Positions 56,923 to 64,000 of a stretch of DNA of 64,000 nucleotides are shown here, one piece after another (positions within the stretch are counted from its first letter, which is position 1; each line of letters starts with the position of its first letter). Under the pieces are notes generated by a model, which saw nothing but the letters and a program-made list of their open reading frames with translations, was not told the DNA's origin and did not search any database. The DNA is taken from positions 13,454,001 to 13,518,000 of the forward strand of contig NC_135263.1 in NCBI RefSeq assembly GCF_964204865.1, in the 5' to 3' direction. The translations under genes were made by a program, and so were the position numbers. The stretch comes from Styela clava (Eukaryota).

Positions 56923-57238
56923 TTTAAATTTTTTTATTATACAGTTATAGCTCTGAATAAAAGTAATTTGTCAATAAGAAATTCTGATACAACCAAATAG
57001 TTTAATCCAGTAATCATCTAATTGAGTAAAAACTTTTTCGAACCACAGAAAACATTTAATATCATATATCAGCATATACAGTTTGCTGAATATCAAATGT
57101 AAATTCCATTATTTCATGTTTCAGATATGAACAATCTAATAATTGTTGAGGTATCGTAAGCCAGTAAGCTGTAGGACAGGGGTTGACAAAGTTTTCTGAG
57201 TGAGGCCCAAATAGTAAAAAATTCCGGGTGTTGTCAAA

Positions 57239-57527
57239 AACTGAATATAACTGAATACAACTGAATACAACTGAACACAACTGAAAACAACTGAATACAA
57301 CTGAATACAAAAACTGAACACAACTGAATACTACCGCACACAACTGAATACACGGCTCGTGGCACGTGACATAAGTTTGAAAATGAATACAACTGAATAT
57401 AACTGAACACAGCTGAATACAACTGAAAACAACTGAAAAAAACTGAATACGACTGAACAGAACTGAAAACAACTGAATACACGCAACGAATACAACTGAA
57501 TATAACTGAACACCACTGAATACAACT
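57239..57527. repeat. 10-bp minisatellite (AACTGAATAC)n in two blocks split by a spacer of about 35 bp
   Basis: Tandem AACTGAA(T/C/A)A(C/T) units, interrupted at about 57352-57385. Confidence 0.9.
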
Positions 57528-57554
57528 CGACAATGGCGCGGGAGGCATAAGATT

Positions 57555-57985
57555 CGTGACGTCATCACTGATTACGTCATAATCGATGATGCGAATTTTG
57601 GAGATAGCCTCTCGAGCAATACATCAAACGTTCCAGAAAGATGAGGCGGTTTCATTACGGTTATTCTTTGCGTGATTGGTGACGTCATTGCTGATTACGT
57701 CATAATTGATATTGCGAATTTTGGAGATAGCCCCTCGAGCAACGCGTCAAACGTTTCAGAAAGATTAGGTGGTTTCATTACGGTTATTCGTGTCATAATT
57801 GGTGACGTCATTACAAATTGCGTCACAATTACAAATGTGCATATTCGAAATATAGTGACGTGCAGTATAATGCACCCTTAATAAAAACGAGATGATTTGA
57901 GTGCGGTAACTTTTGTCGTGATTGATGATATCATCACATATCACATCGTTATCGCCAATGCGAATTTTCGAAATAGCACAGGGAC
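57555..57985. repeat. Degenerate tandem repeat of about 120 bp, 3-4 copies, rich in TGACGTCA/TTACGTCA
   Basis: gtgacgtcat...gattacgtcataat...tgcgaattttggagatagcc...ggtttcattacggttattc recurs near 57557, 57679 and 57802, and weakly near 57920. Confidence 0.75.
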
Positions 57986-58242
57986 AGGTATAGTTCTTAT
58001 GATTCCGAAAACTAGAGGCGATTTCGTTATGACGGTGTTCTCCGACCAGATCCGCCCCTCACCGCCGCGTGTTCGTCTCAACATTTAATTTTTGAACTAT
58101 AATTCATTTTCAAGCAATTTTCAAAATCAATTCATCGCGTCATAATATATTCTATGAAGATCTCATTGTTGAAGAGGGGCCACAAATGTCGTAGCCTGTT
58201 TATTTCTCATCGTCTAGATTCGATCCTGTCTATAGCTTAGGC

Positions 58243-58629
58243 CAGGGGTAGGCAACCTACGGCCCGCGGGACGTATCCGGCCCGCCGAGCAATATAATCC
58301 GGCCCGCGACGCTTCACTGATTTAGACTAAATTATATTATAATCTAACAAGTATATAAATCTCGTTTAATGAGCCTATAATTTTATTATAATTAGACAAA
58401 TGGCAACAAAACGTAGTTGATGCCGAGTCCAAATGGTTTAATGGCGCAGAAAATATTCAAATGATCAGTCTTCGCGCGCTGTTTGAAATTTAACGTCGGA
58501 TCTGTGTGAAAAAGGTGATTCATTGGCCATCCATTCGGTTTTTAACTTTTTTTTAAAATATGTGCGGCCCGCTAATGACTTGCAAGCTTTAATTTTGGCC
58601 CGCGAGCGATAAAAGGTTGCCAACCCCTG
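58243..58629. mobile_element. hAT (Charlie-like) MITE
   Basis: TIRs CAGGGGTAGGCAACCT / AGGTTGCCAACCCCTG (15/16). Subterminal GGCCCG repeats. Flanking direct repeat CTTAGGC (7-9 bp depending on where the boundary is drawn). Confidence 0.85.
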
Positions 58630-58779
58630 CTTAGGCCTACTATTTAACATACTATTGTATTATAATGCGGCTTATTGTGGCATCGGATGTTTACGATAGA
58701 TTGCTTGCAGTCCATTTGCAGATCTGAATATTCGTGTGCACACTAGTAAAGACAGTTCGTTTTCAGTTGTTTGACAGGT

Positions 58780-59440
58780 TTACATATTTATCCCCGGGGA
58801 GAGTAAAGTACAAAAGACGGCTTGATCCTAGGGCTAACCACGACCTCTCGTCCGGTTACCATCCATGTCAGGTGTGGGTTAGTTAGCCAGTTACCGTATT
58901 TGCTCGTTTAATAGCCCGGGCGCTTATTTTTTTTAAACAAACTCACTAACCTGGCCCTTATTCAAACCGGCGCTTATTCAAGCAGGAGCGCTTGTTATTT
59001 TTAAAGTGAAATTATACACAAAAATTACGATACCGGTATCTTTGAAGACAAATATTTGACGACATTAATCCTTTTTCCATGTCAAACGCAAATTATTCAC
59101 GTCTTAAGAGTAATTCCTCATAATACGCTTCTTATTTCCTATTGTTCTCTACCACTGAAAAATCAGCTTTCACACCGGGCGGCTATTCAAACGGGCGCTT
59201 AATCAAGACCGGGCGGTTAAACGAGCATATACGGTATTTGTTTTTAGAGGTATGGACTTGATGGTGAAGAAATCCGTAACCGACCAGCGGTAACGTGAAT
59301 AGTGTCGAGGAGTACAGCAACCCTCTCGCATAAAATTAACCTCCGAATGTGATACGGACCTGCAAACCCACGCAGAGGGATCGAAGGTGCGATGTCGAGT
59401 GTATTCCTAACGCTGAGCACGCTGTAGCCTACCGCCTAGC
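58780..59440 (-). mobile_element. Possible SINE-like element interrupted by the TA-MITE
   Basis: GC-richer tract on both sides of the MITE. The minus-strand head has only loose A-box/B-box-like words (gcgtgctcagcgttagg...gcaggtccgtatcac). No second copy seen in the window. Confidence 0.3.
58894..59234. mobile_element. Tc1/mariner-pogo type MITE with TA target duplication
   Basis: TA|CCGTATTTGCTCGTTTAA ... TTAAACGAGCATATACGG|TA; 17/18 TIR match. Confidence 0.85.
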
Positions 59441-60082
59441 TGCAAACCACCCATTATTCCTTGTTAAGTACGGGATTGCTTACGGAAGTGCTGAAGAAGG
59501 ATGTGTTTTGTATTCTAACTAAAGCACTTGGCGATGAATCACTGACACCTGGATTGAATATTTTCGCTTGTTTTAATAATATTACCACATGATCAAATTG
59601 CGAAAATTAGTTCAGTGTCGCATTTGACGCTGAAAACTTGTCTCCGGGGTCACAGGTCACCAGATGTCGTTTCAAACCTCAAACAAGACTTCTGACACTT
59701 CGCCCGCGCAAGGTGTTAGGTTATTTGGATGCTCGTTGGTCTTAGTTCTCCGATGAGATCATAAGCAATAATTTCGTAAGTGGTTTATGCGAGTAGTAAC
59801 CAAGGTATCTTACGACAGGACTACAAATCTGTATCGCTTGCCCTCGGATGAATACCAACCGTTATATGATTGCGACCAAAGCCTTATGTATACAGCACTC
59901 AGCCCTGCTGCCTCTCTGTTACGTGTTAGCCTGTACAATTCTGTTAAATCTGCTTCGTACCAAGCGAAGATTTCATCGAACCTTTCTTTCCCTTGGATGT
60001 ATTAGGTAACTTATGCAATTGATTTAGCTAGACTATTTTTACTGAGAAAGTCCATTCAAGTTGTCACTAAGAACTGAAGGAG

Positions 60083-63000
60083 ATGGATCAATCCAGTGAA
60101 TCACCATGCGGCATATGCTTTAAGAATTGTGCCGAAGGAAGCCACAGCATTTTATGCGAAATATGTGGAAACTGGTTCCACGGCACCTGCGAGAAATTGA
60201 AAGAAGAATCTATCATGGAACTTGGGAACCTCTCGCAAGCATCGTATATATGCAGAAAGTGCTCTTCGGAAGACGATGGTTCATTCGACTTCTTGACTGC
60301 ACTCCATCGCTTACGCAGAGTAAGTAATTCACCGCTCTTCCGTTCTTATAGACCTAATTACAGATTGTGCATCATCCGTCTAGTGTTTTTATAAAGAAAT
60401 TTATTAAAAGTAAAGTCACGCGCACTCGCTCAAAATGTAGGCGCTGATCTCTGAGCAAAGTTACGGACGATCGCTAAATTGCCAAGAGTTACTGAGGCTA
60501 TAAATTATTATTATATTGAGTGCAGTTAGTAAATACGGATTGCCACGAGACGTTAACGCTGTTTATGTCAACACGATGAAAAATAACTATGAAATAATGA
60601 ATTTCCACATGACGGAATTTATTACAAATTTGGGAATGAAAATTGCTTGTCTGATGGATATATTGTTAGTAAAACGGGTGAACACAGTCCATTCGATTAT
60701 GTATAGATTAAGCACAGTATTGATGGGAAAGATTTTACGGAATTTCATTCTCCATAACCATATGACGACTTTTCCCGAAGGTGAAAATGGGATTTTGTGT
60801 CTGTTCCAATCGGTTTGACAAACCCCGGATGGTTCCCGCTCAATGGGGTCAATGTGAATTTTAAAGTATTGTGATGGTGGAAACGCCATTAGGGATGCTT
60901 GATAGCGGAATTAAACATCATTTTCCATAAATTTTGTGATTGGTGATTCACAACTAATCTCCATTTCTATTTCTAGAGTGCCAAGAAGAATTGGGGCATT
61001 TTTTGTGCATGTACAATCAGGGAAAAGCATATCATGCCATATTTCATAAGTCATGAAAAAGATATCACCAAGTACCATACATCCACTGATCGTCACTCAC
61101 TGGACATATTGCGAAAGCATGGACTGGAGAAAGGCAAACGCCCACTTAAGACTACAGCAGATGGTAATTGTCTTTTCAACGCAGTGTCGTTGCTTCTGAA
61201 TGATTCTGAAGATATGGCTAATGAGCTTCGGACAAGAACTTGCATCGAAATGGTCAATAATGAAGACGAATACATTCAGTCTGATATGGGGAGAGTTGTT
61301 TGTCATGTGTCCCCGGACTACCGCGAAGCCTGTGTCGACTGTACTCGTATTGGTGCTTTTTCTTCAGCTTGGACAATAATGGCACTCTCTAACATCATTA
61401 AAAGACAAGTGAACATGCTGTACCCCCCTGTTAATGGGACAAGGGACTTATATCCAAAGTTTCTCAGCAATTGCATCAAGCCTAGAGAAATAGTTGGCGT
61501 AGATCTGTGGATTATGTGGACAACAACAGAACTGACGATGACTTCTGACTGGATTCCAAATCACTTTGTACCACTTGTTGAAGAAACTGAATTTAATCCT
61601 GGTGCTCTCCATTCTACCCCAGTAAAGGAGGCTTTGAATACTATTCCTGACTCTCCAGGCGTTACCCCATTCAAATTTGGAAAACTCAATTTTGATGAAA
61701 CCAGTTCTGATACTAGCATCGGTTTTGACCAGATTAATTTTGAATTTGGTTGGGATATCAGTGACGACAGCGATGACTCTGCTGATGCGTTCGAGCCAAA
61801 AAAGATGAGGGCTACCACACCAATTACCACATCAAGTCCATCTACTGCTTTCGAATCATCAAATGATGAGCGTGAAATACAATTGAGTGGCAGATTTCGT
61901 GCACCCAATGAACTTTACACAACTATGCTGGCAGAGGTTATTGCTGAAAAAGAAATCCCCACTGGTCCGAAAAGCAACATTGGATTCGTGGTACAGTTGG
62001 GAAAAAATAACAAGAGGAATTTTGTTCCAGATGATTGTGGCGCGTGGTGTGGTGTAAAAGCAGGGTCTACCAGAGCATATTTCCTCATTGAAGAAAATGG
62101 CAACCTGAAATTCGTCAGAAAAGATAAAGATGGCTTCTACACAGAGAAAAAGTCCGGGGGAAAATTCAGGAAAGAGCATGTACGGCCAATGCCCGACACC
62201 CAAGATATCCTAATTCTTCATAGAGTTTACAGCAAACTAAAGGCTAACACGAACTATCGAAAACGGGTGTCCTGGTTTCGTGGTTACGATGGTTCCTGCA
62301 TCGGTGAAGGGAAAGCTGTCGTTGAATACCTGGGAGCTTTTCCGAAACAGCCCATGCCTCCCCATGGAAATACAAAACGAAACAAGCGTGAGTATGTAAG
62401 AACACCTCCTGGAGTTGTAAAAAACATCGATGATCATGTGCAGTCGAGGATGTCCACAAGGGAAATCTATAAGAAAATGATTGGCGAAGATTCGATTCAT
62501 GCCCCGAGGGACTATCGACAAGTGAGATATAGGAAAATGCATGCCAAAAAAGACAGTTGGGGTACAGAGGGTTCACGCACTTTCGCTGATGGGGTTCTTG
62601 ATGTGCTAAGCATGGTACAGACAGATGACTTCGTGCGAGAGGCAGCGGTAATCAAAGGTTCCCCACCCTGTGTGATTTTGTATACCAACAATCAGCTCGC
62701 TGATCTCAAGCGAATAGCTTCAACAACAAGTGACAAAACAATTTTGGGTGTTGATCGCACGTTTAACCTTGGTGCCTGTTATGCCACTATAATAGTGTAC
62801 AAGCAGTCGAAAGTTGTAAGAAATAGCACTGGTGAAAATCCTATATTTTTGGGCCCAATTTACCTCCACTGGGATGGAAAATTCACGACATATTGTCACT
62901 TTTTCTCTCACTTGAGCTCCAGGATATCAACCACTGCTTTCACTTCGGAAATTAGGATTGGAAGTGACAACGAGTTTGCTTTAACAAAAGCTCTTGACAA

Positions 63001-63703
63001 GTGTTTTCCGGGAGTTCAGCGGTTTCTATGCACACGACACTTGATCCAAAATGTGCAGCGTTTGTTGCGGACAAAGGGGTCGATTTCCGAAGAGTCGAAA
63101 AAAATGCTGTTATCCTCTCTTTTCGGGGATGATGGAATTGCCAGAGCAGTTTCAAATGAGGAATTTGAAACCAAATCTGTCGAATGCAAAAGGCTTATTT
63201 CAAAGTTCCCCGAAGATATCAAGAGGTATATAACTGCACAGATTATGCCTCTGCTTGCAGAGTACGTTGTCAAACCGAGGAATGGGCTAATGCAAAAAGC
63301 GCTGTGGACCAACAACAATTCTGAGTCGATGAACAACCTCATAAAAGTTGACATTGATTGGAAGCCACAAAAGCTGCCTCAACTAATCAAAAAATTTAAA
63401 GACCATGCTATTTTGCAGTACACAGACATGCGGAGAGCCATTCACGGCAGGGGCAATTATTCCCTAAGTTCAAGGTTCAAAAAGTATTCCTACAGCAATG
63501 CAGTATGGCGAGAGATGGGAGAGGGCCAAAAAGAGAAAATATTTCAAAAATTAATTTTTGAAAAAGACCGTTCCCATATTCCCCTTGAAAACGAAATGGA
63601 AGAAGCGTCGAACCCAGCATTTCTTTGTCCAAGAAAATCGCACATTGCCAGAAAGCCGGGACAAAAGAAGGGAACTAGGGCCGAAAGAGCAGCAAAAAAG
63701 TAG
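60083..63703 (+). CDS. Mutator-like (MULE) DDE transposase fused to an N-terminal PHD finger and a vertnin-like OTU cysteine-protease domain, about 987 aa
   Basis: Exon 60083-60319 ends AGA|gtaagt (phase 0) and encodes a C4HC3 PHD (CGIC...CEIC-x4-H-x2-C...CRKC). Exon 60977-63703 follows ttctag and is in frame with the 889-aa ORF. OTU motifs: ADGNCLFNAVS...W...PNHFVPL. MULE motifs: LGVDRTFNLG (D), GSDNEFAL (D), LCTRH (CxxH), TNNNSESMN (E). AATAAA at 63928-63933. Confidence 0.8.
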
Positions 63704-64000
63704 ATGGAGAGATGTAACGTGGCTCCTATTATGACACAGACTAATATTCACTACACATAGCTTATTCATCCAGTGTTTTTGATGAGCTATCGGACAAAAT
63801 AGTCACTGGCTTCGTGTTTTTATCTTTTATTACAGTTCGTTTGTGTGTTGGTGTTTTAACAGTTCATTGTTTTCACGTTGGTTAGGCTGATGTGTATGCT
63901 TTAATGAACATGTCATTTCTTTGCACGAATAAAACAAAACGTGATGTTACATACTTTTCTTTGCTGTTGTTAAGATAATCATGCTCGCCTTTCAGTTTGT

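What the first reader, a model, noticed from the sequence alone, without database searches (positions are those of the whole stretch)
60083..63703. Intact Mutator-like transposase carrying a chromatin reader (PHD) and a putatively active deubiquitinase (OTU) in one polypeptide
Seen: the 889-aa ORF has no stops or frameshifts and holds an OTU-type catalytic set (DGNC...NHF). An acidic Ser/Thr linker follows, then a DDCGAW...PHGN..YVRT region and a full MULE D-D-CxxH-E core. A clean phase-0 intron (60320-60976) would add a PHD finger at the N-terminus. Established: PHD fingers often read histone H3 tails; OTU domains cleave ubiquitin or ubiquitin-like modifiers; some MULEs carry Ulp1 proteases or PHD fingers; OTU domains occur in other transposon classes such as some Helitrons. 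Inference: this is a read-erase-insert machine that could choose targets by histone mark and strip repressive or degradative ubiquitin, acting as a built-in anti-silencing module. I do not recognise the PHD-OTU-MULE order as a characterised family, but I cannot confirm novelty without a search.
Basis: partly seen in the sequence, partly recalled or inferred. Interest (0 to 1): 0.85.

Follow-up and report, generated by a model that had tools for sequence, protein, structure and literature searches.

The report
Young sea-squirt Mutator transposon with PHD and OTU
This is a young, transcribed, apparently still mobile Mutator-type jumping gene of the sea squirt Styela clava whose single protein joins a chromatin-reading PHD finger and a ubiquitin-cleaving OTU protease to the transposase, an arrangement conserved across many marine invertebrates that I found described in no paper.

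Summary
The 889-codon ORF (61034-63703) is open. The proposed GT..AG phase-0 intron (60320-60976) is spliced out in transcript-like contigs of three runs. RefSeq annotates exactly this 987-aa product in Styela clava.

The gene lies in an 8.1-kb element (window 57226 to about 65372, past the window end). It has about 690-bp terminal inverted repeats (TIRs) with subterminal tandem repeats. All five intact copies have perfect 9-bp target-site duplications. Seven full-length copies are 99.6-99.8% identical.

Domain order is PHD, OTU, disordered acidic linker, WRKY/GCM1-like DNA-binding domain, then an IS256/Mutator-type DDE core with D672, D743, C764xxH767 and E862. The fold search hits the ISCth4 transposase and OTU deubiquitinases.

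Across 36 full-length relatives (19-39% identity) the OTU Cys144 and His275 are invariant. A complex model puts ubiquitin's C-terminal tail in that site (0.86 against 0.00 in controls).

Named relatives come from tunicates, amphioxus, molluscs, a brachiopod, a crinoid and arthropods.

The "read-erase-insert, anti-silencing" mechanism is untested. PHD fingers and cysteine proteases are each known in Mutator-like elements, and OTU in Ginger1 and Helitrons, so this is a new variant of a known kind. A link to vertebrate vertnin could not be tested.

The parts
57217..57225 (.). Left copy of the 9-bp target-site duplication AAAAATTCC. The right copy lies outside the window, at about 65373-65381.
   Evidence: All five intact copies have perfect, mutually different 9-bp duplications.
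57226..57913 (+). Left terminal inverted repeat (about 688 bp), starting GGGTGTTGTCAAAAACTGAATA. The right TIR lies at about 64683-65372, outside the window.
   Evidence: the arms are 90-92% alike; the terminal 60 bp are identical at both ends of all five copies.
57239..57527 (+). Array of a 10-bp unit (AACTGAATAC, about 28 copies) inside the TIR.
   Evidence: Mirrored at the right end.
57551..57830 (+). Subterminal 123-bp repeats (2.3 copies here, 4 at the right end) that carry TGACGTCA-like palindromes. They may be transposase-binding sites (inference).
58450..59237 (.). Two unrelated high-copy short repeats (58450-58630 and 58892-59237) nested in the element's 5' non-coding part and shared by all copies.
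   Evidence: many dispersed copies at 82-97% identity and 3547 first-look candidates; high contig depth.
59803..60082 (+). 5' untranslated region. Transcript-like contigs begin at 59803-59824.
   Evidence: table 8.
60083..60319 (+). Exon 1 coding part (79 codons): PHD finger, C4HC3 pattern (C9, C12, C25, C28, H33, C36, C57, C60).
   Evidence: PF00628 30.7 bits against a cut-off of 24; the closest solved PHDs are Pygopus, KMT2C, MLL1 PHD3 and BPTF; the finger is conserved in relatives.
60320..60976 (+). Intron, 657 bp, GT..AG, phase 0.
   Evidence: sequence; joint in contigs of three runs; the RefSeq model uses the same junction.
60977..63703 (+). Exon 2 coding part (908 codons plus stop): helical linker, OTU, disordered linker, DNA-binding domain, DDE transposase.
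61067..61594 (+). OTU cysteine-protease domain (residues about 110-285 of the 987-aa product). Asp141 is at 61160-61162, Cys144 at 61169-61171 and His275 at 61562-61564.
   Evidence: PF02338 above its cut-off; fold matches OTUD1/3/5, A20, VCPIP1 and viral OTUs. Cys and His invariant in 36 relatives; ubiquitin tail docked at residues 140-145 and 272-276; coordinates.
61592..61867 (+). Acidic, Ser/Thr-rich disordered linker (residues 285-376).
   Evidence: pLDDT 26-31; no conserved columns here.
61871..62374 (+). Beta-rich domain with the DDCGAW and HGN..YVRT motifs. It is probably a WRKY/GCM1-type DNA-binding domain.
   Evidence: model pLDDT 87. GCM Z 6.5, NAC 6.4, WRKY33 5.3, WRKY 3.8/3.7, AFT2 3.8. 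These Z values are middling, so this is a lead with support, not proof.
62582..63574 (+). Mutator/IS256-type DDE transposase core. D672 is at 62753-62755, D743 at 62966-62968, C764xxH767 at 63029-63040 and E862 at 63323-63325.
   Evidence: the top fold hit is the ISCth4 (IS256-family) transposase, E 1.8e-6; catalytic residues invariant or nearly so. MULE in 30 of 36 relatives and Transposase_mut in 15; coordinates.
63704..63949 (+). 3' untranslated region. AATAAA is at 63928-63933 and the contigs end at 63949.

Best explanation
This is an autonomous, recently active DNA transposon of the Mutator (MULE) superfamily in Styela clava.

Shown: the 8.1-kb element has about 690-bp TIRs with subterminal tandem repeats and makes 9-bp target duplications. 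One two-exon gene is transcribed and spliced into a 987-aa protein. Its order is PHD finger, OTU protease, disordered acidic linker, a beta-rich domain that is probably of WRKY/GCM1 type, and a DDE core with a CxxH motif.

Inferred from the family: the DNA-binding domain recognises the repeated subterminal motifs, and the IS256-like DDE core cuts and pastes the element.

Inferred from conservation and modelling: the OTU domain is a working deubiquitinase, or a protease of a ubiquitin-like modifier, that the transposon needs. The most likely role is removing ubiquitin from the transposase itself or from chromatin or repair proteins at the site of transposition.

Inferred from sequence likeness only: the PHD finger tethers the protein to methylated histone H3 tails (H3K4me2/3 type) and so biases where it acts.

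The PHD-OTU-MULE arrangement marks a large clade in marine invertebrates, not a one-off fusion.

The confidence given (0.8) is for the identity and anatomy. For the proposed role of the OTU domain I would put it near 0.5, and for the PHD role near 0.4.
For: - **Boundaries, TIRs and copy identity:**
- **Target-site duplications:** perfect 9-bp TSDs at five copies.
- **Copy number:** 14 termini, so seven full-length copies, plus a few old fragments.
- **Intact copies:** five intact 987-codon genes.
- **Youth:** 62 substitutions, all private to single copies, 7-17 per copy.
- **Expression:** spliced transcript-like contigs, and the RefSeq model is identical to this locus.
- **Pfam:** PHD and OTU above their cut-offs.
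- **Fold:** ISCth4 (IS256-family) transposase and OTU deubiquitinases are the top hits. The middle domain matches GCM, NAC and WRKY.
- **Conservation:** OTU Cys144 and His275 and DDE D743 and C764 are invariant, and D141, D672, H767 and E862 nearly invariant, in 36 full-length relatives at 19-39% identity.
- **Architecture in relatives:** of those 36, 30 hit OTU, 30 hit MULE and 8 hit PHD. Lingula P0088 has the same order with MULE at 32.9 bits, above its cut-off.
- **Family size:** 1813 representatives at E <= 1e-30.
- **Ubiquitin docking:** OTU plus S. clava ubiquitin scores 0.86 against a best control of 0.00. That mark was reached by 51 of 78 solved complexes and 2 of 108 mismatched pairs. 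Runs agree in at least 98% of contacts and the partner pLDDT is at least 92. Ubiquitin residues 70-76 contact residues 140-145 and 272-276.
- **PHD:** the nearest solved fingers are Pygopus, KMT2C, MLL1 PHD3, BPTF, Alfin-like, DIDO1 and PHF2/8. From established knowledge most of these read H3K4me2/3.
Against: - Pfam MULE is below its cut-off in this protein itself (16.6 against 27.6 bits).
- No transposition event, protease activity or histone binding was observed.
- The ubiquitin-complex pass may reflect the model's memory of solved OTU-ubiquitin complexes. It cannot tell ubiquitin from close ubiquitin-like modifiers.
- The WRKY/GCM1 assignment rests on Z values of 3.7-6.5, below the level at which chance folds are excluded.
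- Among the copies, variable codons are 19 non-synonymous to 1 synonymous. The copies are therefore decaying neutrally, and intactness here reflects youth, not selection.
- The runs with the spliced contig are only guessed to be RNA, and their contigs match the family majority rather than this copy at 61899.
Confidence: 0.8

Rival explanations
1. The OTU domain is a self-processing protease. It cuts the 987-aa product in the disordered linker and releases a PHD-OTU piece and a separate transposase, as proposed for protease-bearing MULEs of Medicago.
For: A 90-residue disordered linker separates OTU from the DNA-binding domain. Babu et al. 2006 (PMC1702500) proposed polyprotein processing for MULE transposases fused to an OTU-superfamily protease. 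From established knowledge, viral OTU and papain-like proteases often do both jobs.
Against: The linker has no conserved column in 26 or 36 relatives, and no Gly-Gly motif is visible in it. An OTU cleavage site of the ubiquitin-tail type is therefore not apparent. The modelled substrate groove takes the ubiquitin tail with high confidence.
Confidence: 0.15
2. The PHD reads a histone mark to choose targets, and the OTU strips repressive or degradative ubiquitin from chromatin or silencing factors. That would make it a built-in anti-silencing module.
For: The PHD resembles H3K4me2/3 readers. The OTU active site is conserved and predicted to take ubiquitin. There is a precedent for MULE-encoded anti-silencing: the VANDAL elements, cited as reference 54 in PMC6446971. 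Ubiquitin or SUMO proteases have been acquired repeatedly by Ginger1, Helitron and MULE elements (PMC2836005).
Against: There are no data on targets, insertion-site chromatin or silencing. The five target duplications share no motif. H3K4me marks active, not repressed, chromatin, so the 'erase' step has no identified substrate.
Confidence: 0.2
3. The PHD-OTU part is a passenger picked up from a host gene (Pack-MULE style) with no role in transposition. Alternatively, the locus is a host gene derived from a transposase rather than a mobile element.
For: MULEs are known for capturing host gene fragments (PMC6446971). NCBI annotates the copies as ordinary protein-coding loci.
Against: The same domain order, with invariant OTU catalytic residues, is kept in relatives at 19-39% identity from several phyla. 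Seven copies at 99.6-99.8% identity, each with TIRs, and five with perfect TSDs, show a mobile element rather than a single-copy host gene.
Confidence: 0.03

Closest known systems
Rehavkus group of the Mutator/MuDR superfamily (Repbase; summarised in Dupeyron et al. 2019, PMC6446971)
   Same: [quoted passage not shown]
   Different: Rehavkus is reported from arthropods and annelids with TIRs of 26-400 bp, and the papers I read mention no OTU. Here the TIRs are about 690 bp, the host is a chordate and an OTU domain is present. Sequence kinship to Rehavkus transposases could not be tested because no Repbase sequences were available.
MULEs that carry a cysteine protease: Ulp1-bearing MULEs of plants, hydra and lancelet, and Medicago MULEs with a C-terminal OTU-superfamily protease
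   Same: A Mutator-type transposase is joined to a papain-fold protease of the ubiquitin/SUMO system (PMC2836005; PMC1702500).
   Different: In those elements the protease is Ulp1 (C48) or sits C-terminal. Here an OTU (C85) sits N-terminal, behind a PHD finger and before the DNA-binding domain.
Ginger1 DNA transposons (Bao, Kapitonov and Jurka 2010, PMC2836005)
   Same: The transposase is fused to OTU or Ulp1, and one family also has a PHD. They occur in marine invertebrates (Hydra, Aplysia, Branchiostoma).
   Different: The Ginger1 catalytic core is a Gypsy-integrase-like DDE with C-terminal accessory domains, and its termini differ. Here the core is IS256/Mutator-like with 9-bp TSDs.
OTU domains of animal Helitrons, and of a tyrosine-recombinase (Crypton-like) protein
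   Same: The family profile hits the OTU parts of Adineta Helitron proteins (E 1e-27 to 1e-23) and of a Tubulanus OTU plus Phage_integrase protein (E 8e-50).
   Different: The transposition enzymes are unrelated: a Rep/helicase in one case and a tyrosine recombinase in the other.
ISCth4 / IS256-family bacterial transposases (PDB 6xg8, 6xgx)
   Same: They are the best structural match for the catalytic part. From established knowledge IS256 is the accepted prokaryotic relative of Mutator, as also stated in the preprint read.
   Different: They have no PHD, OTU or WRKY/GCM1-type domain. Sequence identity is 12-13%.
Vertnin (VRTN) of vertebrates
   Same: A clam fragment of this family (P0238) is named 'VRTN-like protein' by its source; it covers the PHD end, the N-terminal half of OTU and the middle domain. 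VRTN is reported to hold a papain-like domain without a catalytic site (PMC10318531).
   Different: No vertebrate VRTN sequence was retrieved in any search, so the relationship was not tested. The element's OTU keeps its catalytic residues.

Membership tests
Mutator / MULE superfamily of DNA transposons | Target-site duplication of about 9 bp (8-11) | tested here: met
   Perfect 9-bp duplications flank all five intact copies, each with a different sequence. The left one is at window 57217-57225.
Mutator / MULE superfamily of DNA transposons | Terminal inverted repeats, often long | tested here: met
   The TIRs are about 688-691 bp, the arms are 90-92% alike, and the terminal 60 bp are identical.
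Mutator / MULE superfamily of DNA transposons | DDE transposase with the MULE signature (D, D, CxxH, E), recognised by the Pfam MULE or Transposase_mut models | tested here: met
   D672, D743, C764xxH767 and E862 are invariant or nearly so in relatives. MULE hits 30 and Transposase_mut 15 of 36 relatives, and Lingula P0088 is above the cut-off. This protein alone is below the cut-off (16.6 against 27.6 bits).
Mutator / MULE superfamily of DNA transposons | IS256-like RNase H fold of the catalytic core | tested here: met
   The Foldseek top hits are ISCth4 transposase chains at E 1.8e-6 to 1e-4, probability 1.00. TM-scores are low because the query is a 987-residue multi-domain model.
Mutator / MULE superfamily of DNA transposons | WRKY/GCM1-type DNA-binding domain N-terminal of the core | tested here: inconclusive
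   GCM, NAC, WRKY and AFT structures take ranks 1, 2, 6, 11, 12 and 17, but at Z 3.7-6.5. Only one Cys and one His are conserved, so a classical zinc site is doubtful.
Rehavkus group (MuDR superfamily) | 9-bp TSD, long TIRs with subterminal tandem repeats, PHD finger in the transposase | tested here: met
   The definition is taken from PMC6446971 and the Tribolium preprint.
Rehavkus group (MuDR superfamily) | Transposase sequence groups with the Repbase Rehavkus transposases | not testable with these tools
   No Repbase or Dfam sequences were available.
OTU deubiquitinases (Pfam PF02338, MEROPS C85) | Match to the family model above its curated cut-off | tested here: met
   27.5 bits against 23.3. 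30 of 36 relatives match.
OTU deubiquitinases (Pfam PF02338, MEROPS C85) | Catalytic Cys in a D-G-x-C loop, and catalytic His | tested here: met
   D141-G-N-C144 and H275 are present. Cys and His are invariant and Asp nearly invariant in 36 relatives. The Cys loop aligns with that of OTUD1.
OTU deubiquitinases (Pfam PF02338, MEROPS C85) | OTU fold | tested here: met
   OTUD1, OTUD3, OTUD5, A20, Cezanne, VCPIP1 and viral OTUs match at E 5e-6 to 2.6e-3.
OTU deubiquitinases (Pfam PF02338, MEROPS C85) | Binds and cleaves ubiquitin or a ubiquitin-like modifier | not testable with these tools
   Only a prediction is available: score 0.86 against a best control of 0.00, with the ubiquitin tail at the active site. 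Enzyme activity needs a bench assay.
PHD finger (Pfam PF00628) | C4HC3 zinc-ligand pattern and a model match above the cut-off | tested here: met
   The pattern is C9-x2-C12-x12-C25-x2-C28-x4-H33-x2-C36-x20-C57-x2-C60, read from the sequence. The model scores 30.7 bits against 24.
PHD finger (Pfam PF00628) | Binding of a histone H3 tail | not testable with these tools
   There is only sequence likeness to H3K4me2/3 readers.
Vertnin (VRTN) family | Detectable homology to vertebrate VRTN | not tested
   No vertebrate VRTN was retrieved. Only a source-given name, 'VRTN-like', on a clam fragment of this family.

The most novel reading that the evidence does not exclude
The PHD-OTU module is a chromatin-directed counter-defence carried by a whole clade of animal Mutator elements. 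The PHD finger would bring the transposase to H3K4-methylated chromatin. The OTU would remove ubiquitin from histones, repair factors or the transposase itself, which would protect or license transposition. In addition, vertebrate vertnin may be a domesticated, catalytically dead descendant of this clade.
Probability: 0.2. Interest if true: 0.75.

Novelty: new variant of a known kind. Interest (0 to 1): 0.5.

Why it matters
MULEs are reported as nearly absent from chordates, with one Ciona savignyi sequence in the 2019 survey (PMC6446971). Here is a young, transcribed family with intact copies in a tunicate.

The protease active site is as conserved as the transposase active site across several phyla. 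That argues ubiquitin-system enzymes are working parts of these transposons, not passengers. Ginger1, Helitrons and plant MULEs raised this idea but it was never tested.

The element offers a compact natural system for that test: one gene, clear ends and five intact copies. It can show what a transposon-borne deubiquitinase and histone reader do for transposition.

If the vertnin link holds, it would also give an origin for a vertebrate developmental regulator.

Tried and rejected
- **Designed armadillo-repeat proteins.** The PDB sequence search with the whole ORF gave these at E about 1e-11 to 1e-4, most with no stretch passing on its own. I treat them as compositional matches in the helical C-terminal part. 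The fold search does not support them.
- **Weak Pfam hits.** MEF2_binding, FYVE, RING and others are all below their cut-offs and were ignored.
- **Rfam.** A scan of 57000-64000 found nothing. The high contig depth at 58500-59235 comes from nested dispersed repeats, not an RNA gene.
- **Vertnin.** Neither the single-protein search, the family-profile search nor a profile built around the clam 'VRTN-like' fragment returned a vertebrate VRTN. The representative search shows only its best 150 hits, without names. The link stays untested.
- **PF27108.** It is precomputed on this protein but is not in the local Pfam copy, so its identity is unknown to me.
- **Literature.** Searches for an OTU-bearing animal MULE found none.
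- **Selection among the copies.** None is visible: 19 non-synonymous to 1 synonymous variable codons, all substitutions private.
- **Joined spliced protein.** I did not type or search a joined protein. Searches used exon references or the database proteins P0001 and P0281. In one search a script read the two exons in frame one after the other to count codon changes; the intron is phase 0. It printed counts only.
Full report
**What is at the coordinates**

The 889-codon ORF at 61034-63703 exists. Its frame is open upstream to 60977, directly behind a TTTCTAG acceptor. A 79-codon exon at 60083-60319 ends before GTAAGT. The interval 60320-60976 is therefore a GT..AG intron in phase 0.

Pfam gives three matches:
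- PHD on exon 1: 30.7 bits against a cut-off of 24.
- OTU at the start of exon 2: 27.5 bits against 23.3.
- A sub-threshold MULE match: 16.6 bits against 27.6.

**The splice is real**

Contigs of three runs of one study skip exactly 60320-60976. One 3472-nt contig covers 59824-60319 plus 60977-63949. Nothing covers the intron or 59420-59787. The contig ends 15-20 nt after an AATAAA at 63928.

All genomic copies keep the intron, so the joined form is best read as mRNA. The runs are only guessed to be RNA. Their contigs carry the family's majority base at 61899, not this copy's private G.

NCBI's protein XP_077976471.1 (P0281, 987 aa, 'uncharacterized protein LOC144432185 [Styela clava]') equals exon 1 plus exon 2 of this window without a difference. 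I did not type or search a joined sequence. I used the exon references and the database proteins.

**The gene sits in a transposon**

The window is contig C18 of a 377-Mb genome. The genome holds five intact copies and two broken ones at 99-100% protein identity.

Alignment of 20-kb stretches around five copies gives a shared block of 8105-8151 bp. In window coordinates it runs from 57226 to about 65372, which is 1372 bp past the window end. It has about 690-bp inverted termini that are 90-92% alike. The outermost 60 bp are identical at both ends of all copies. Each copy is flanked by its own perfect 9-bp duplication; here that is AAAAATTCC at 57217-57225.

The termini hold an array of a 10-bp unit and 123-bp subterminal repeats with TGACGTCA-like palindromes.

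A search with the terminal 200 bp finds 14 ends, which makes seven full-length elements, plus a few older fragments. There is no swarm of short derivatives.

The five intact copies are 99.6-99.8% identical. All 62 substitutions are private to one copy. Variable codons are 19 non-synonymous to 1 synonymous. This is a recent burst from one source followed by neutral decay. For the codon count a script read the two exons in frame one after the other. The intron is phase 0, and only counts were printed.

**What the protein is**

An AlphaFold model built on 26 relatives has mean pLDDT 78.9. Residues 285-376 and the last 40 residues are disordered.

Foldseek against the PDB gives two groups of hits:
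- ISCth4, an IS256-family transposase, as best match (E 1.8e-6).
- OTU deubiquitinases: VCPIP1, OTUD1, OTUD3, OTUD5, A20, Cezanne and viral OTUs (E 5e-6 to 2.6e-3).

PHGN..YVRT, residues about 378-545) was folded alone (pLDDT 87). It matches the GCM domain (Z 6.5), a NAC domain (6.4), WRKY domains (5.3, 3.8, 3.7) and AFT2 (3.8). Babu et al. 2006 assign this fold family to MULE DNA-binding domains (PMC1702500). The Z values are middling, so I call this probable, not shown.

The PHD has a complete C4HC3 pattern. Its nearest solved relatives are Pygopus, KMT2C, MLL1 PHD3, BPTF, Alfin-like, DIDO1 and PHF2/8. From established knowledge most of these bind H3K4me2/3.

**The architecture is old and constrained**

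A profile search of 1.84 billion representatives finds 13843 proteins at E <= 0.001 and 1813 at E <= 1e-30. Many cover the whole profile and have a 70-100-residue N-terminal extension.

In 36 full-length representatives at 19-39% identity to the Styela protein:
- OTU Cys144 and His275 are invariant, and Asp141 is nearly so.
- DDE D743 and C764 are invariant.
- D672, H767 and E862 are nearly invariant.

Pfam finds OTU in 30, MULE in 30, Transposase_mut in 15 and PHD in 8 of the 36. Lingula P0088 has PHD, OTU and an above-threshold MULE in the same order.

Named hosts:
- Tunicates: Styela clava, Ciona intestinalis.
- Cephalochordate: Branchiostoma.
- Echinoderm: Antedon (a crinoid).
- Arthropods: Oratosquilla, Pycnogonum.
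- Molluscs: Sinanodonta, Mya, Pinctada, Elysia.
- Brachiopod: Lingula.

Styela itself holds further, divergent lineages with long open frames.

**How it most likely works**

Shown: the ends, the target duplication, the copies, the transcript, the folds and the conserved residues.

Inferred from the family: the middle domain binds the repeated subterminal motifs, and the IS256-like core cuts and pastes the element.

The OTU residues are held as tightly as the transposase residues across phyla, so the protease is very likely active and useful to the element. A complex model of residues 100-290 with Styela's own ubiquitin scored 0.86 against 0.00 for the best of three controls. That mark was reached by 51 of 78 solved complexes and 2 of 108 mismatched pairs. 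The runs agree in at least 98% of contacts and the partner pLDDT is at least 92. Ubiquitin residues 70-76 lie against residues 140-145 and 272-276. OTU-ubiquitin complexes are solved, so this pass shows likeness. It does not show binding, and it cannot tell ubiquitin from close relatives.

My preferred reading is a deubiquitinase that acts on the transposase or on chromatin or repair proteins during transposition, with the PHD as a chromatin tether.

Self-processing in the linker is a rival. No conserved site is seen there.

**Comparison with what is known**

- PHD fingers define the Rehavkus group of MuDR elements. That group also has 9-bp duplications and long termini with tandem repeats (PMC6446971). 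The resemblance is close, but kinship could not be tested without Repbase.
- Cysteine proteases are known in MULEs: Ulp1 in several, and a C-terminal OTU-superfamily protease in Medicago.
- OTU is known in Ginger1 and Helitrons.
- The family profile also hits the OTU of Adineta Helitron proteins and of a Tubulanus tyrosine-recombinase protein. This suggests that one kind of OTU circulates among transposon classes.
- I found no paper that describes an N-terminal PHD-OTU module on an animal MULE.
- The 2019 survey found almost no MULEs in chordates.

**The vertnin lead**

A clam fragment of this family is named 'VRTN-like' by its source. VRTN is reported to contain a papain-like domain without a catalytic site (PMC10318531). 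No vertebrate VRTN sequence could be retrieved, so this remains a lead.

**Limits**

PF27108, precomputed on this protein, is not in the local Pfam copy. Repbase and Dfam were not available.

**Verdict**

This is a real, well-defined, young Mutator-superfamily element whose transposase carries a PHD finger and a conserved, probably active OTU protease. It is a new variant of a known kind and of moderate interest. The mechanistic story remains to be tested.

Noticed in passing
window 58450-58630 and 58892-59237: Two short dispersed repeats (about 180 bp and about 300-345 bp) are nested in the element's 5' non-coding part in all copies. They have many other genomic copies at 82-97% identity (3547 first-look candidates) and very high depth in the transcript-like contigs. 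They are probably SINE- or MITE-like families.
   Followed up: partly
window 57551-57830; L018:2590-3045 (right end, outside the window): The 123-bp subterminal repeats carry repeated TGACGTCA / TTACGTCA palindromes (CRE-like). These may be transposase-binding sites or host factor sites.
   Followed up: no
G000:C10:8545567-8548068, C2:26344621-26346192, C4:14977798-14979369, C17:18669334-18672210 and others: The same genome holds several divergent OTU-MULE lineages (31-50% identity) with long open frames of 940-1001 aa. One more PHD-bearing paralogue is P0002 (LOC120335330, 955 aa). The clade has diversified within Styela.
   Followed up: no
P0238 (Mya arenaria): A 370-aa clam protein named 'VRTN-like protein' by its source is a fragment of this family. 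It covers the end of the PHD, the N-terminal half of OTU and the WRKY/GCM1-like domain. It hints that vertebrate vertnin may descend from such elements, but no vertebrate VRTN could be fetched to test this.
   Followed up: partly
P0242 (Tubulanus polymorphus), P0245 and P0247 (Adineta steineri): The family profile hits OTU domains fused to a tyrosine recombinase (Phage_integrase, Crypton-like) and to Helitron Rep/helicase proteins. Related OTU domains therefore occur in three unrelated transposon classes.
   Followed up: partly
five intact copies, CDS 60083-60319 and 60977-63700: Variable codons among the copies are 19 non-synonymous to 1 synonymous, more skewed than the roughly 3:1 expected under neutrality. 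G>A is the commonest private change (14 of 62). This may be chance or a mutational bias.
   Followed up: partly
G000:C13:4816644-4833110 and G000:C3:15717261-15725355: There are two broken copies. One is stretched to 16.5 kb by an insertion that splits the gene near codon 130. The other has a frame break near codon 461 and a TAA.
   Followed up: no
P0001 and relatives: The Pfam family PF27108 is precomputed on this protein and on several PHD-bearing relatives, but it is missing from the local Pfam copy. Its name and position are unknown to me.
   Followed up: partly
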